A stretch of DNA of 64,000 bases, from assembly GCA_002269645.1 (NCBI GenBank), contig NIVC01000833.1:1-64000 (forward strand). Direction: 5' to 3'. A program made the position numbers and the translations under genes. Position 1 is the stretch's first letter, and every line of letters begins with the position of its first letter. Of the stretch, positions 1 through 25,191 are shown in pieces. Under the pieces are notes generated by a model, which was given only the letters and a program-made list of their open reading frames with translations, ran no database searches and was not told where the DNA came from. Source of the DNA: Macrostomum lignano. Lineage: Eukaryota.

Positions 1-414
1 TTGAAGGAGATGTCCGCCACTTTCCCATGTCCTTGTTTCTCAGGTTGTCCAGCCGCCGCCTAATTAAATGTGGTTGTATTTTTACTGGATTTTTTAGCGG
101 TAAAATCATCGAAACATCTCAGTGGTATGCAAAGATGGAGAGGCGAGAGAGAGAGATGATATTTTGAAGTGCAGATACACTCGTATACACATGCAATTCA
201 GTCCTATTTTTGTCAGCTTCTGAATAATAAGATACTTACCAGGAAGCGCAGAAAAGCGATTTAGGTTGCTCTTCTTGTCGACGAGCCATTTGCAAGCTGG
301 TAGATTATTTTCATTGGCTTGATGATTTTTAACCTCGGTAACCGAAGGTGGTGTTGCTTGAGCAGCGCAGACAATGGCTGCCGCCAATGCCACAGCGGCA
401 ATGCCTTGGAGCAT
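1..414 (-). CDS. MPEG1: Perforin-2/MPEG1 paralog 0, 5' part (exon 1 414-240, intron 239-60, exon 2 from 59 running off the window)
   Basis: Signal peptide MLQGIAAVALAAAIVCAA, then RFSALPG|GTAAG donor. The TAG acceptor is followed by GGW-(D)NLRNKDMG-(K)VADISF, matching the other paralogs, with two apparent 1-nt deletions at 49-50 and 21-26. Confidence 0.85.
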
Positions 415-741
415 AGCGCTCGGTTCAGTTGCAACGCTCTCCTTGTTCCTTACTTGAACGGAGCAGGATTAGCAGGCAGCACACCGTAATCATATTATAT
501 ATTTATCTTGTTGACGGATATAAACTCTAATTAGCTTTGAAAATCTATTTAGAACCTTGACTATTTATTAATACCCCCGCACTTAGAAGCACAAGTGAGA
601 GCAGTAAATTTGACTATAAATAATCTTCTAATTGTCTTGAAGCTTTATCTATAGCACCTTTGTATGTATATGTATATGTACATGTATATGTATATGTTGT
701 ATATGTATATATTGCCTACTATTGTCCCATATGCGCAGTGT

Positions 742-867
742 ATACTTCGCTACGCGCTGGGCGTGCACTACCCGGAGCGCCTGCCGTCCAACGCTCTGAT
801 GGCCCGCGCTGGAACTTCGCCCCTGAGCGCTACCCTGCGCTGGCGCCGCGGCGTGGCGGCCGACCGG
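742..867 (+). mobile_element. Short RTE-like LINE fragment (C-terminal RT region), beside a (TATATG)n microsatellite at about 661-710
   Basis: ILRYALGVHYPERLPSNALMARAGTSPLSATLRWRR resembles the RTE motif LRRILGVHWPEKISNEELYRRTG..PLS..IRRRR. It is a GC-rich island in AT-rich DNA. Confidence 0.45.
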
Positions 868-21673: not shown

Positions 21674-22273
21674 AGATTTCAGGAGAGCGGAGGTCTCAAC
21701 GTCCTTTCGGACGGGGAACCCCGCACGCTCAACCTCTGTCTTCGATTCAAGGTCAGTCTTCCTCCCCGTGAGGAGGCTAACGACCACTGGAATCCCCAGG
21801 AGGTCCACTGCTACACAGACGGATCCCTAAAAGACGGTCTCTCCGGTTTTGGGGTCTGCATTCTTATCAATGGCAGCGTGCTCGCCACGCATGGTCTACG
21901 AGTACCGCACTGTGTTTTGCATTTGTTGCTAAGTTTAGACATTCGTATTTTGATGGAGGCAATAAGTTCACCTTCTGTTTGAAACTGCTAAACATAGAAA
22001 CAAGAAGCTACGCTCGTACAATTGAATTTAATGCATTGTTGGGTGAGAAGAAAGTCCGCAAACAATGGTGTCACCCAGATGCTAAAGATAGAAACAAGCT
22101 CGATCTGCTGAATTTGATATTTAAGCGGAAACTAAAGATAGAAACACGGCCCTCTTGACTTTAGTATTTATATGAGAAGCGATTGTGGGATCTCGGCAGG
22201 AAATCGGGCAGAGCGAGAGCCTGCAGACTGAGACAGGAAAGCAATTTGGCTTCACCAACACTGACTCGCCGGA

Positions 22274-25191
22274 ATGCAACTGCCGTTGGTTCTTTCGATC
22301 CTCGCTGGTCTTTGCTGTTGCATTGGGGCTGCACCAGTTAGCAACCTCAATCAGAGCTTGCCCGCCTCGGATGGCAGCAACAGGTGCGTGTGGCTGCTTA
22401 ATAGCGGAAGCTCGATCACTCGGTTCTCTTCGATGCCAGGTAATTAACGAGATTTTTTGACACTTGAAATATTTTGTGTTGGCAAGCGTTTTACCTTGCT
22501 GTTTTTCTAAGATGGAAAATGAAAACCTCATCTTCTTGATTGACAGGTGGCGGCTGGGACAACCTGAGAAACAAGGACATGGGTCTCGTAGCCGACCTGT
22601 CGTTTACAGACTGCGCCCTGTCAGATGACGGCATGTACGTTCTGCCGAAGAATGTGATTCTGTACCCGAGAAAGGAGTCCAACATAGAGGTGATGTCCGA
22701 AGTGATTGACCACTTTAGCAACTATACCAGCTCGCTAAGCGTCTCGATCAATCTAGAAGCCAGTGGAAAAATCGCTGCATTTAGGATTGGCGGAAAACTG
22801 TCTAACGAGTTTCAACAGGTGAAGAAGGTCGCGGTGCAGAACAAACTGGATATTGGCAGGTCTCAGCTTCGTTACCGACTCTACTCTTCGAAGCTTCAAC
22901 CAGACTTCAAGCTGTCTGCAGCGCTCACCAATCGCTTGACGGAAGTGATGAACGCGCTGGTGAACAATCAAACAAAGCTGGCTCGATACCTGTCCGATCT
23001 AATCGTCCGGGACTTCGGAACCCACGTGATCACCTCTGTAGAGGCTGGAGGCATTCTTGAAAAGCTGGACTTCTTTAATTCTCGTTCCATCGACGACTCG
23101 AACTTCATGCAGAACAAGTTTTCAGCAGCAGCAAGCTTCAGCTTTCTTCGTTTTTTCAGCTCCAATATTAGCATCGGTGTTTCCGTGACGAATGAAGAAG
23201 TCACCAAGTACAAGAATAGTATTCGCAAAATGATTTTACGAACTTCGGGCGGACCAGTCCTTGGTTCGAACCCGAAGCTGGACGACTGGATCAAGTCTTT
23301 ACACGAGAATCTGGTGCCGATCGATCGCAATGGCGAGCCGCTGTACAGCGTGGTCAACAGGCGCTCCCTTCCGAACCTGCCCATGACGCACATGTTGAAG
23401 CTGCGGAAGGAGATCGAGGATGCCGTAATGCGGTAAGTATTACCGAGCATCTACGAATGAGAAGCTTTTCAAGCATGCTCAAAAGAATGCTGCTCAAAAG
23501 AAGGTTTGCCATGACTGATTTCAGCTACTACAAGGCCAACACCGTCAAGGGCTGTCTGGACCCGAATTCGAGAAACTTTGACCCCATCGCCAATACAGCC
23601 GGCCAGTGCGAGGCTCCCGGCACCAACTTCAGCTTCGCTGGCGTCTATCAGCAGTGCTGGGAGTCGAACCCCCGCGCGGGCTTCAACCTGTGCTCCGGTG
23701 CAGGCAGCGGCGTTCTGCTCAACCCCATCACGGGCGGGACCAGGTGTCAAGTTGGGTATGAGCCGGTGAGTAAATTTAGCTTTTTCAGTTAGAGGCAGAG
23801 GGTTGTGTGCACCCTGGCTCACTTTAAGAGAGGCGGCATTACTGCCCATTCCGCCGACTCCCCTGAGCAAGCACACACGCGCATCATACATATGAAGTCA
23901 TACGCACAGCACAGGAGTGTACAGCGGCCCAAACTTTATTTATTGTTAGGCCTGTACACTTCATTTTGCCTTGGAGGTTGGCCCTCAAGGGTGTTTATTG
24001 CTCGAGCAGACCCAAGCCGAGATTCCAATTTAGCCCTAAGTTAATGCGACTGCACTTGGAATCGAGCCCAGGCCGCTGGCACATCAGAGCGCCGCGCTGG
24101 GCACCACTGGGCTACGGCCCCTCGAGTAAATCTAGCTACATTTGTACTTACGAGTAGTTCGATTTAAGTGTAGGGTACAACTTTCTGCTTCTCAATAACA
24201 CTCTGTCCTACCAGCGGACCGTTTCAGGCTACTTAACGATCCGTAAAGTGTTGCTTTTCCAGGTGAAGCTTCTTTCGACCGTTGGCCGCAACAGCAAGCG
24301 CTGCTGGAAGACGAAGCATTGCACTTCCTGGTTTATCTGGTGCGTTCACCACGAAGAGCGAACCCAATGCGTCGACTCGTACACCGTCCTGACTGCCTAC
24401 TGGTGCACTGCTCGTCGCACTTCGAAGCTGATCCCAACCCCGGCATGTTCTACGCAGGCGCCTACGCTGCGGACGGACGATTCCTCAACGACATCACGCA
24501 GAGCAAAGAGTGTCCGGAGCACTTCCGGCCCTACAAGGTCGGACGCGACATCTACCTGTGCCTGAGTATGGACCTGAGCAGGGCTTCTCGCGGCAGAATC
24601 CCGTTCGCCGGGTTCTTTTCCTGCGACTCGGGCAACCCGCTGTCGGAGACAAGCGGAGGTCTGGATGCGCCGAAGCACTGCCCGAAAGAATTCAGCCAGG
24701 TGACTCTGGACACGGTCGACGGCTGCGCAATCATGCAGTGCGTGAAGGGTCGCTCCGGGCTCGCCCAGATTCAAGTGAGGCGCCCGCCATTCGAGGAGCC
24801 CGACTATGAGTTGGTCGAGCATCCCGTCACTGTCGTGAAACATCACGGCTGGCGTTGGTCCTTTAATATCACACAGCACGTGTGGCGCTTCCTCGGCTTC
24901 TTCGGCTCAGCTTCGAGCGATGACGAAACCAGCTCAATCGACAGTAGCAGCAGCTACAACAGCAGCAGCAGCAGCAGTTCTGATGCCGAATCGGCGCCCT
25001 ACAGCTCTGCTCAGGAGTCCACTTCGGAGTCCGCCTCTCCGTCTCCGGCAGGTATCGCGGCCCTCGTTGGCATCATATTGGGCATCGCCGGAATTGTCGT
25101 GCTGTCTGTGTGGCTCCGCAGGCGCTGCGCTCGCTGCCGCTCGGCTTCGGACGAAGCAGCAGTTGCCACACCGCAAGAAGCCTCCGCTTAA
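22274..25191 (+). CDS. MPEG1: Perforin-2/MPEG1 paralog C; exons 22274-22439, 22547-23432, 23525-23765, 24263-25191; apparent 1-nt deletion at about 24429-24435
   Basis: MQLPLVLSILAGLCCCIGAAP signal peptide (exon 1 = 55 codons + 1 nt), GGWDNLRNKDMG, MACPF, P2, Ser-rich stalk, TM GIAALVGIILGIAGIVVLSVWL and a short tail. Confidence 0.93.
23782..24123 (-). mobile_element. tRNA-derived SINE in intron 3 of MPEG1-C with 14-bp TSD
   Basis: TSD GAGTAAATTTAGCT (23768-23781) / GAGTAAATCTAGCT (24124-24137); A- and B-box-like head. Confidence 0.82.

What the first reader, a model, noticed from the sequence alone, without database searches (positions are those of the whole stretch)
1..25191. Five-copy perforin-2/MPEG1 cluster with four divergent paralog types
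Five MACPF-P2(-TM) gene copies lie in 25 kb: 0 (-), A (+), B (+), C' (-) and C (+). MPEG1 is a single gene in mammals. Here the paralogs keep the MACPF core and intron positions but differ in N-terminal propeptide, P2 hairpin, stalk and cytoplasmic tail. This looks like a locally diversifying antimicrobial pore-forming arsenal in an invertebrate, and the cluster continues beyond the left edge. The functional reading is inference.
Basis: partly seen in the sequence, partly recalled or inferred. Interest (0 to 1): 0.8.

Follow-up and report, generated by a model that had tools for sequence, protein, structure and literature searches.

The report
Flatworm perforin-2 (MPEG1) gene cluster
This is a real cluster of pore-forming immune genes (perforin-2/MPEG1) in the flatworm Macrostomum lignano, but the genes are already annotated, the species' MPEG1 expansion is already published, and the apparent gene damage looks like sequencing error.

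Summary
The window is the first 64 kb of Macrostomum lignano contig NIVC01000833.1 (assembly Mlig_3_7). It holds four full-length MPEG1/perforin-2 genes: A, B, C' and C. It also holds the 5' stub of a fifth gene (copy 0), which is cut off by the end of the contig, not by the window. The four paralog types are real and old. They are 54-73% identical in the MACPF+P2 region, synonymous sites are near saturation, and they share three intron positions. They evolve under purifying selection (dN/dS 0.17-0.32 between types; pN/pS 0.07-0.3 between subgenome copies). C' and C are the arms of a perfect 4,186-nt palindrome around a 1,494-nt spacer made of decayed LINE sequence. A second contig carries the same palindrome with 99.64% identical arms and the spacer flipped, so the palindrome is not an artefact. 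Every frameshift in the window is a one-base shortening of a C run, and the other subgenome copies or the ML2 assembly are in frame at those sites. Assembly error is therefore much more likely than gene decay. The same layout recurs on three contigs 0.7-1.7% apart, matching the three published subgenomes. A 2023 paper already reports 13 MPEG1 genes in M. lignano, and that count is inflated by this redundancy. The main finding is already known; the palindrome with its flipped spacer is a small new detail.

The parts
1..414 (-). Copy 0 (type 0 perforin-2), 5' stub only. Exon 1 (signal peptide and N-terminal segment) lies at about 238-414, then an intron, then the first ~59 nt of exon 2 at 1-59. 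The gene is cut by the contig start. There are two 1-nt C-run contractions, at positions 24 and 49.
   Evidence: P0005 residues 1-59 match 414-238 at 100%. Three-frame reading shows GGGW / DNLRNKDMGK / KVADISF in three different frames. Both other contigs carry the extra C at both sites. The full 786-aa gene is present on the sister contigs.
1290..4561 (+). Copy A (type A perforin-2). Exons 1290-1455, 1812-2694, 3231-3474, 3600-4561. As assembled, a 1-nt gap at 4120 (TCC-GAC) diverts the frame before the TM segment. Restoring one base gives 751 aa with signal peptide, MACPF, P2, TM and tail.
   Evidence: NCBI model P0007 (743 aa) equals the uncorrected reading. Sister P0008 and ML2 P0132 are in frame at this site. 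The third contig is also in frame. MACPF E 1.1e-18. PDB MPEG1 E 5e-96.
5498..8241 (+). Copy B (type B perforin-2). Exons 5498-5666, 5747-6631, 6777-7017, 7108-8241. A 1-nt C-run contraction lies at 5844. Restored length is 809 aa, with a poly-Ser stalk and a long acidic cytoplasmic tail.
   Evidence: Sister P0125 (805 aa) and the third contig's 809-aa model are in frame. PDB 6sb3 E 1.7e-110 over aa 52-623.
8949..9618 (.). A 20-21-nt minisatellite between B and the Kelch gene.
9866..14137 (+). BTB-BACK-Kelch gene (703 aa model) that interrupts the perforin-2 cluster. It is present at the same place on all sister contigs.
   Evidence: Pfam BACK and Kelch_1 hits. Called gene. Same neighbour.
15994..20179 (-). 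Left palindrome arm, carrying C' (type C perforin-2). Exons 19414-19579, 18421-19306, 18088-18328, 16662-17590. Frameshift at 17417. The inner ~480 nt is the 3' end of a LINE.
   Evidence: Inverted repeat I1, 4,186 nt, 100% complementary. NCBI model P0122 (531 aa, BOX15_Mlig003757g4/g3) equals the uncorrected translation.
20180..21673 (-). Palindrome spacer: a decayed non-LTR retrotransposon body (endonuclease and reverse-transcriptase fragments), contiguous with the LINE 3' end in the left arm. Its orientation is flipped on the sister contig.
   Evidence: Exo_endo_phos_2 E 5e-8 and RVT_1 E 4e-6. The spacer matches L003 7907-9400 only on the minus strand, at 99.4%.
21674..25859 (+). Right palindrome arm, carrying C (type C perforin-2). 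Exons 22274-22439, 22547-23432, 23525-23765, 24263-25191. A frameshift lies in the C run at 24433-24435 (one C restored after 24435 in the model, written 24436 elsewhere). Restored length is 740 aa, with a short tail, insertions in the P2 hairpin and a 14-aa loop deletion.
   Evidence: ML2-assembly protein P0123 carries the window-type Q allele and reads in frame as LIPNPG.

Best explanation
This is one subgenome's copy of a lineage-specific tandem cluster of perforin-2 (MPEG1) genes in the flatworm Macrostomum lignano. Four old paralog types (0, A, B, C) arose by local duplication within the Macrostomum lineage, and all are kept under purifying selection. Type C was later duplicated in inverted orientation around a LINE fragment. 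The two arms are kept identical or nearly so by arm-to-arm gene conversion, and recombination between the arms has flipped the spacer in one subgenome relative to another. Each gene encodes a type I membrane protein with a signal peptide, a MACPF pore-forming domain, a P2 membrane-recognition domain with a cationic hairpin and hydrophobic tip, a stalk (CTT), one TM helix and a cytosolic tail. By homology with mammalian perforin-2, the products most likely assemble into ring-shaped pre-pores on endosomal or phagosomal membranes and perforate engulfed microbes after acidification. The paralogs differ mainly in the parts that set target-membrane binding (hairpin charge and tip), pre-pore locking (CTT, mostly missing in A) and trafficking (tail). 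Subfunctionalisation is therefore the likeliest reason that four types persist. The frameshifts in every copy are consensus errors of the PacBio-based Mlig_3_7 assembly, not gene decay. What is shown: family identity, gene structure, age and constraint of the paralogs, the palindrome, and the homopolymer context of all frameshifts. What is inferred: the pore-forming immune function, subfunctionalisation, gene conversion, and that the spacer flip is biological.
For: Identity: the best hits are M. lignano proteins named 'Macrophage-expressed gene 1 protein', followed by MPEG1 of molluscs, echinoderms, fish and mammals. PF01823 is found in all types. Only MPEG1 chains are hit in the PDB, at E 1e-92 to 1e-110 across MACPF+P2, and the isolated P2 chain 6sb1 gives E 6e-39. 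The MACPF signature (F/Y)GTHVxTxV(E/D)AGG, a signal-like N-terminus and a C-terminal TM followed by basic residues are present in all four types. Expansion within the lineage: the Macrostomum copies are monophyletic (100% bootstrap), the cluster members form a clade (93%) and B+C group together (100%). Constraint: dN/dS is 0.17-0.32 over MACPF+P2, with dS 1.6-2.4 (0.55 for B-C). Between subgenome copies pN/pS is 0.3 for A and 0.07-0.09 for B, with no stop codons. Frameshifts as errors: the four frameshifts in 0, A and B are 1-nt contractions of C runs, and both other contigs are in frame there. Each other contig has its own private homopolymer gap elsewhere. At the C frameshift the sister arms have T, and the ML2 protein P0123 with the window's own Q allele reads LIPNPG, meaning CCCC against the window's CCC. 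The assembly is Canu PacBio polished with Pilon, in a genome where 93% of read pairs map to multiple places. Palindrome: sister contig NIVC01002244.1 has the same arms at 99.64% identity (13 mismatches, 1 gap), the same outer boundaries and an inverted spacer. At every site where the sister arms differ from each other, the two window arms agree and carry a mosaic of the two sister states. Three cluster copies 0.7-1.7% apart match the S, L1 and L2 subgenomes. Hairpin and CTT mapping uses mouse residues Y427-V452 and A577-I642 and the alignments.
Against: No reads were available, so the frameshifts are not formally disproved. The C/C' frameshift is shared by both window arms, and relative to the sister contig it is loss of a T flanked by C's rather than a pure homopolymer change. 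It could be a real null allele spread by gene conversion. Perfect arm identity could partly reflect polishing with multi-mapped reads. The spacer orientation depends on long reads spanning a 4.2-kb arm and could be an assembler choice. No expression data specific to each copy were examined. The annotation is transcript-guided, but reads multi-map among subgenome copies. No functional data exist for any flatworm MPEG1. Pairwise dN/dS cannot exclude positive selection at a few sites such as the hairpin; B-C dN/dS in P2 is 0.40-0.44 against 0.25 in MACPF.
Confidence: 0.8

Rival explanations
1. Decaying pseudogene array. The frameshifts are real, most copies on this contig are non-functional, and function is carried by the copies on other subgenomes.
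For: Every copy in the window has at least one frameshift as assembled. NCBI models are truncated or lack a TM because of them (P0007 has no TM; P0122 is 531 aa). A neopolyploid with three subgenomes can tolerate loss of redundant copies. The C/C' frameshift is identical in both arms.
Against: The frameshifts are the only lesions. There are no stop codons or larger disruptions. pN/pS between subgenome copies is 0.07-0.3. All are single-base losses in C runs and private to one contig. The other contigs carry equivalent private homopolymer gaps at different sites (S: A exon 1 and C exon 3; T: A exon 2). Two of the frameshifts lie within 50 nt of a contig end, where coverage is lowest. ML2-derived proteins are in frame at the A and C sites.
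Confidence: 0.1
2. The C'/C palindrome, or its perfect identity and the flipped spacer, is an assembly or polishing artefact rather than genome structure.
For: The arms are 100% identical over 4,186 nt in an assembly with roughly one indel error per kb. 36% of Mlig_3_7 by length lies in chimeric scaffolds, and copy-number errors are described. Placing the spacer between identical arms requires reads longer than 4.2 kb.
Against: A second contig assembled the same palindrome with the same outer boundaries but with arms that differ at 13 sites plus one indel. The arms were therefore resolved separately there. A missed-adapter PacBio chimera would give a palindrome without a spacer, but here the spacer is 1,494 nt of unique LINE sequence contiguous with one arm. 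Both arm genes carry separate transcript-guided annotations on both contigs.
Confidence: 0.12
3. The paralogs are real and functional, but their main role is not antibacterial defence. They could, for example, permeabilise food organisms (diatoms, bacteria) inside gut phagocytes, or support endosomal escape or antigen-like cargo release. In that case the four types reflect tissue or compartment specialisation.
For: Mammalian perforin-2 is also reported to open endocytic compartments for cytosolic delivery (abstract of PMC13631362). The tails, which direct trafficking in mammals, are the most divergent parts here (21-46% identity). Flatworm digestion is largely intracellular (general knowledge, not tested here).
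Against: No expression or localisation data were examined. The conserved cationic hairpin with a hydrophobic tip matches the feature that gives mouse P2 its preference for negatively charged bacterial lipids.
Confidence: 0.2

Closest known systems
Mammalian perforin-2 / MPEG1 (mouse 6sb3, 6sb5, 8a1d; human 6u23, 6u2j-6u2w)
   Same: The order of parts is the same: signal peptide, MACPF, EGF-like linker, P2 domain with an extended disulfide-braced hairpin, CTT, one TM and a cytosolic tail. Alignment covers residues about 27-582 of the solved ectodomains at E 1e-92 to 1e-110. The MACPF signature motif and a hydrophobic hairpin tip (WLVF, WLIF, YIFF against mouse LKIF) flanked by Lys/Arg are present.
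   Different: There are four clustered paralog types instead of a single gene, and three introns are present. Type A lacks most of the CTT and both N-terminal cysteines. Type C has insertions in the hairpin and a 14-aa loop deletion. The stalks are Ser-rich and low in complexity, and the tails are unrelated to the mammalian tail. Function is untested.
Published invertebrate MPEG1 expansions (PMC10781884: 'M. lignano has 13 MPEG1'; also molluscs, rotifers and others)
   Same: These are the same genes. The paper counts M. lignano proteins from this assembly and reports a monophyletic platyhelminth clade and frequent invertebrate duplication.
   Different: In the passages read, the paper does not describe the genomic layout. 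This analysis shows that the count mixes about five or more paralog types with three near-identical subgenome copies (contigs NIVC01000833, 2244 and 1121, plus a more diverged B-like locus on 0118). It also shows that several annotated proteins are truncated by assembly frameshifts.
Fish mpeg1 tandem duplicates (mpeg1.1, mpeg1.2, 'macrophage expressed 1, tandem duplicate 1')
   Same: MPEG1 is duplicated locally in tandem and more than one copy is retained (names).
   Different: That duplication is independent and vertebrate-specific. The Macrostomum copies form their own clade.
Gene-bearing palindromes with arm-to-arm gene conversion and spacer inversion (for example primate sex-chromosome palindromes, or inverted-repeat flip-flop in plastid genomes)
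   Same: There are two inverted arms of 4.2 kb, each carrying a gene, around a unique spacer. Arm identity (100% and 99.64%) is equal to or higher than the identity between homologous palindromes on different subgenomes (about 99.5% at substitutions). The window arms are a mosaic of the two sister-arm variants. The spacer has opposite orientation on the two contigs.
   Different: The palindrome is much smaller, autosomal and in a neopolyploid flatworm. Its centre is a LINE fragment. Neither conversion nor inversion has been verified with reads. The comparison to those systems rests on general knowledge, not on a test run here.

Membership tests
MPEG1 / perforin-2 (MACPF superfamily) | MACPF domain (Pfam PF01823) above the gathering score | tested here: met
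   Scores are 68.6-86 bits against a cutoff of 21.5, for A, B, C/C' and sister copy 0.
MPEG1 / perforin-2 (MACPF superfamily) | MACPF signature motif (Y/W/F)-G-(T/S)-H-x7-G-G | tested here: met
   The motifs are FGTHVVTTVDAGG (0), YGTHVVTSVEAGG (A) and FGTHVITSVEAGG (B, C), all at about residue 212.
MPEG1 / perforin-2 (MACPF superfamily) | P2 domain C-terminal to MACPF, homologous to the solved P2 domain and including the extended hairpin | tested here: met
   phmmer alignment runs through chain residue about 580. The P2-only chain 6sb1 is hit at E 5.7e-39 (B) and 6.4e-32 (A). The hairpin cysteine pattern is found in all four types.
MPEG1 / perforin-2 (MACPF superfamily) | Type I membrane topology: N-terminal signal peptide, a single C-terminal TM, a cytosolic tail | tested here: met
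   Hydropathy peaks of 1.8-3.0 occur at residues 1-24 and at about 645-716, followed by R/K clusters. For A and C in this window this holds only after one base is restored. No dedicated signal-peptide or TM predictor was available.
MPEG1 / perforin-2 (MACPF superfamily) | C-terminal tail region (CTT) between P2 and TM that locks the pre-pore | tested here: inconclusive
   A conserved RRPPFE...HPVT..HGWRW..GF segment is present in 0, B and C. In A only RRPPFEDAEFETLE remains. Homology of this segment to the mouse CTT (A577-I642) falls mostly outside the significant alignment, which ends at chain residue about 582.
MPEG1 / perforin-2 (MACPF superfamily) | Closer to MPEG1 than to other MACPF families (perforin-1, complement C6-C9, astrotactin and others) | tested here: met
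   All 120 listed hits with names are MPEG1 or MPEG1-like. Only MPEG1 chains pass E 1e-3 in the PDB. The NJ tree did not include non-MPEG1 outgroups.
MPEG1 / perforin-2 (MACPF superfamily) | Oligomeric pore formation triggered by acid pH; bactericidal activity | not testable with these tools
   This needs recombinant protein, liposome or EM assays, and RNAi with bacterial challenge.
Gene-converting palindrome (inverted-repeat amplicon) | Two long inverted arms with near-identity around a unique spacer | tested here: met
   Arms are 4,186 nt at 100% with a 1,494-nt spacer. The sister contig has arms of about 4,193 nt at 99.64%.
Gene-converting palindrome (inverted-repeat amplicon) | Arm-to-arm identity higher than the divergence between homologous copies of the palindrome (concerted evolution) | tested here: met
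   The window arms have 0 differences from each other. They differ from the sister arms at about 20 substitutions per 4.2 kb. The window arms carry a mosaic of the two sister-arm states. A polishing artefact cannot be excluded.
Gene-converting palindrome (inverted-repeat amplicon) | Structure confirmed by molecules spanning arm, spacer and arm | not testable with these tools
   No raw reads were accessible.

The most novel reading that the evidence does not exclude
Two readings are not excluded. First, the four clustered perforin-2 types may be functionally specialised pore-formers. Type A would have a strongly cationic hairpin (9 K/R), no CTT lock and no N-terminal disulfide. Type C would have a re-modelled, His-rich hairpin and a minimal tail. 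Types 0 and B would have long acidic tails. These would target different membranes or compartments. Second, the C'/C palindrome may be a recombinationally active unit that doubles the dose of the most derived type, homogenises it by gene conversion, and flips its LINE-bearing spacer between subgenomes. If so, this would be a compact invertebrate model for how pore-forming effector repertoires diversify after polyploidy.
Probability: 0.3. Interest if true: 0.45.

Novelty: already known. Interest (0 to 1): 0.25.

Why it matters
The practical value is mostly corrective. The published figure of 13 MPEG1 genes in M. lignano mixes true paralog types with three near-identical subgenome copies. Several database proteins (P0007 without a TM, P0122 at 531 aa, P0121 at 431 aa, and a 501-aa A model on NIVC01001121.1) are truncated or mis-framed at single-base homopolymer gaps that are most likely assembly errors. 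Anyone using these sequences for phylogeny, antimicrobial-peptide mining or RNAi design should use the corrected frames. Biologically, M. lignano is a transgenic and RNAi-tractable flatworm. A defined set of four old, constrained perforin-2 types differing in hairpin, CTT and tail is a reasonable system for asking what those regions do. The small gene-bearing palindrome with a flipped spacer is a tidy example of inverted-repeat dynamics in a neopolyploid, but it is not a new kind of thing.

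Tried and rejected
(1) I tested whether the dense cluster of window-private synonymous changes in B exon 4 (7593-7704) is a gene-conversion tract copied from paralog C or A. Only about 4 of 10 sites match C, so this is not supported. It is also not copied from the B-like gene on NIVC01000118.1. The cluster remains unexplained.

(2) I tried to look up the frame-corrected C protein in public assemblies to find in-frame transcripts.

(3) A literature search for the gene identifiers (Mlig003757, Mlig012544, Mlig025771, Mlig010268, Mlig000615, Mlig024937) found no paper.

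(4) A first bootstrap tree with Biopython's distance calculator timed out. It was replaced by a numpy Kimura-distance NJ tree with 200 replicates.

(5) I considered a missed-adapter PacBio foldback as the origin of the palindrome. I rejected it because of the 1.5-kb unique spacer and the independent sister-contig copy with non-identical arms.

(6) I considered that the window contig and NIVC01002244.1 are simple alleles. A third copy (NIVC01001121.1) at similar distance, together with the published three-subgenome structure, fits better.

Full report
**What the window is.** The best protein hits to the spliced C gene are Macrostomum lignano proteins at 99% and 64% identity. After those come MPEG1 proteins of molluscs, echinoderms, sponges, cnidarians, fish and mammals at 31-39%. 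Looking up NCBI protein P0007 returned contig NIVC01000833.1 of assembly GCA_002269645.1 (Mlig_3_7). Its gene coordinates are identical to the window's, and the locus sequence equals window 1-14538. Window position 1 is therefore the start of the contig. The left edge is an assembly edge, not just a window edge.

**Checking the observation.**
- Pfam finds MACPF (PF01823) in the large ORFs of A, B, C' and C.
- tblastn with the window's own exons and with the M. lignano reference proteins finds four full genes and nothing else up to 64 kb.
- By reading splice junctions I built four-exon models for A, B and C.
- The three introns sit at the same codon positions and phases in all three genes. The sister-contig copy of gene 0 has the same positions.
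- Copy 0 in the window is only its signal-peptide exon (about 238-414, minus strand; 100% to P0005 residues 1-59) plus the first ~59 nt of exon 2.
- On the sister contigs the genes beyond copy 0 are a mitochondrial carrier and an LRR/endonuclease gene. The cluster therefore ends with copy 0.
- A BTB-BACK-Kelch gene (9866-14137) and a minisatellite lie between B and C'.

**The C'/C pair.**
- C' and C lie in a perfect inverted repeat: 15994-20179 against 21674-25859, 4,186 nt and 100% complementary, with a 1,494-nt spacer.
- The spacer holds fragments of a non-LTR retrotransposon on the minus strand (Exo_endo_phos_2 E 5e-8; RVT_1 E 4e-6). This element continues into the inner end of the left arm. 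The right arm carries only the inverted 3' fragment.
- NCBI annotates two identical proteins on this contig (P0122, 531 aa, BOX15_Mlig003757g3/g4) and two on contig NIVC01002244.1 (P0121, 431 aa, g1/g2).
- Fetching that contig showed the same order Kelch / C' / spacer / C with the same outer boundaries. There the arms are 99.64% identical (13 mismatches, 1 gap). The spacer matches the window's spacer only in reverse orientation, at 99.4%.
- A palindrome assembled twice independently, once with distinguishable arms, is not a foldback artefact.
- At every site where the two sister arms differ from each other, the two window arms agree, sometimes with one sister arm and sometimes with the other. 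This is the pattern expected from arm-to-arm gene conversion. Homogenisation by polishing cannot be excluded without reads.
- The flipped spacer is what recombination between inverted arms produces. It also awaits read-level confirmation.

**The frameshifts.** Every copy is out of frame once as assembled. I aligned the window to NIVC01002244.1 (0.7% substitutions) and to a third copy of the cluster on NIVC01001121.1 (1.2-1.7%).
- At positions 24, 49, 4120 and 5844 the window lacks one base of a C run, and both other contigs are in frame.
- Each of the other contigs has its own private single-base homopolymer gap elsewhere. These are A exon 1 and C exon 3 on one contig, and A exon 2 on the other.
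- At the C/C' frameshift the sister arms read ATCTCC. The protein P0123, from the independent ML2 assembly, carries the window-specific Gln allele and reads LIPNPG. That corresponds to CCCC where the window has CCC.
- Restoring one base per gene gives complete proteins of 751 aa (A), 809 aa (B) and 740 aa (C).
- Mlig_3_7 is a Canu PacBio assembly polished with Pilon. In this genome 93% of read pairs map to several places, which explains residual homopolymer errors.
- Two of the errors lie within 50 nt of the contig end.
- I conclude that the frameshifts are most probably assembly errors. The C/C' one is the least certain.

**Family membership.**
- B and A match only MPEG1 chains in the PDB. 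E-values are 1.7e-110 and 5e-96, the alignments run from about residue 27 to 582 of the ectodomain, and the isolated P2 domain is also hit.
- All four types have the MACPF signature, a hydrophobic N-terminus, and one C-terminal hydrophobic helix followed by basic residues.
- The mouse structure paper places the membrane-binding hairpin at Y427-V452, with the hydrophobic tip LKIF and a cationic shaft. It places the CTT at A577-I642.
- In the alignments the flatworm tips are WLVF (B), WLIF (A) and YIFF (0). Type C has SWFIW with two short insertions.
- K+R counts in the hairpin segment are 9 (A), 6 (B), 6 (C) and 5 (0).
- Type A has lost most of the CTT-like segment. It has also lost both cysteines of the N-terminal pair.
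- Type C lacks a 14-residue loop and has a 26-residue tail. Types 0 and B have long acidic tails.

**Age and selection.**
- Over MACPF+P2 the types are 54-61% identical, and B and C are 73% identical.
- Synonymous divergence is 1.6-2.4, which is saturated. For B-C it is 0.55.
- dN/dS is 0.17-0.32. The N-terminal exon and the stalk/TM/tail are far more diverged, but no region exceeds 0.75.
- Between subgenome copies pN/pS is 0.3 for A and 0.07-0.09 for B.
- An NJ tree places all Macrostomum sequences in one clade (100%) and the cluster members together (93%). A further M. lignano type (P0006) falls outside the cluster clade. B and C are sisters (100%).
- An expressed B-like orthologue from an unidentified sample (P0003, intron-less contigs in SRR28338163-5) groups with B at 68%.
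- This is an old, constrained, lineage-specific tandem family, not a decaying array. The data show no sign of pervasive diversifying selection, although site-level tests were not possible.

**Genome context and prior knowledge.**
- The same layout (mitochondrial carrier / 0 / A / B / Kelch, then C'/C where it could be seen) occurs on three contigs 0.7-1.7% apart. This fits the three subgenomes S, L1 and L2 described for this neopolyploid.
- A fourth, more diverged locus (92-97% identity) on NIVC01000118.1 has only a B-like gene and a Kelch gene, followed by a RING gene.
- UniProt and NCBI already name these proteins.
- PMC10781884 states that M. lignano has 13 MPEG1 genes and highlights duplication in invertebrates.
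- No paper was found that describes the cluster layout, the palindrome or the annotation errors.

**Verdict.** The finding is not new, and the 'diversifying arsenal' reading is not supported by the selection estimates. What this analysis adds is listed below.
- The window's left edge is a contig end.
- The frameshifts are most likely errors.
- The published copy number is inflated by subgenome redundancy.
- Type C sits in a gene-converting palindrome whose spacer is flipped between subgenomes.

Noticed in passing
window 7108-8241 (B exon 4), especially 7593-7704: Synonymous divergence of B between the three subgenome copies is about 4-5%, yet flanking non-coding DNA differs by only 0.5-1.7% and neighbouring gene A by 0.2-2.6%. 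Ten window-private changes, none of which alters the protein relative to sister B (P0125), cluster within 110 nt. Copying from paralogs C or A, or from the B-like gene on NIVC01000118.1, does not explain them.
   Followed up: partly
L005 (NIVC01000118.1 122932-145370): A fourth, more diverged (92-97%) copy of part of the locus. It holds a B-like gene (P0002, 727 aa, short tail), an expanded 21-nt minisatellite and a Kelch gene, followed by a RING-finger gene. No A or 0 lies within 9 kb upstream and no C-type gene follows Kelch. This is probably an older segmental duplicate.
   Followed up: partly
window 35758-44602: A Ty3/gypsy-type LTR retrotransposon flanked by identical 38-nt-period repeat blocks (35758-35894 and 44466-44602). 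It has a gag-like ORF (36439-37338) and an uninterrupted 1,374-aa pol ORF (38012-42136). The pol ORF reads as protease, RT, RNase H and integrase by eye; Pfam was not run.
   Followed up: no
window 45953-46420 (+): A single-exon ORF encoding a ubiquitin-ribosomal protein S27a fusion (begins [11 protein letters not shown]...), sitting between the retrotransposon and a large minisatellite.
   Followed up: no
window 46753-48827; 49201-50016; 52056-53220; 57215-58076; 60944-63930: The right third of the window is dominated by long minisatellites: 24 nt x 87, 33/65 nt, 20 nt x 58, 18 nt x 46 and 15 nt x 199 copies. These explain the strong GC and AT skew seen there. The 15-nt unit also occurs inside the Kelch gene (11605-11735).
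   Followed up: no
window 23973-24090 and 17763-17880 (intron 3 of C and C'), and 27968-28085: A 118-nt dispersed repeat (87% identity) lies inside the last intron of C and C' and again 2 kb right of the palindrome. It is probably a small mobile element.
   Followed up: no
L002 5739-8573 (copy 0 on NIVC01002244.1): The annotated 786-aa model of copy 0 skips 36 nt in frame within the cytoplasmic-tail exon. This is either a 36-nt mini-intron or a modelling device.
   Followed up: no
public protein records P0024, P0009, P0128, P0132 (ML2-assembly models): Several UniProt 'Macrophage-expressed gene 1' entries from the older ML2 assembly are chimeras or contain out-of-frame stretches. P0024 reads through the A tail into B in mixed frames, and P0132 has a garbled segment in the P2 hairpin. 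They should not be used for alignments.
   Followed up: partly
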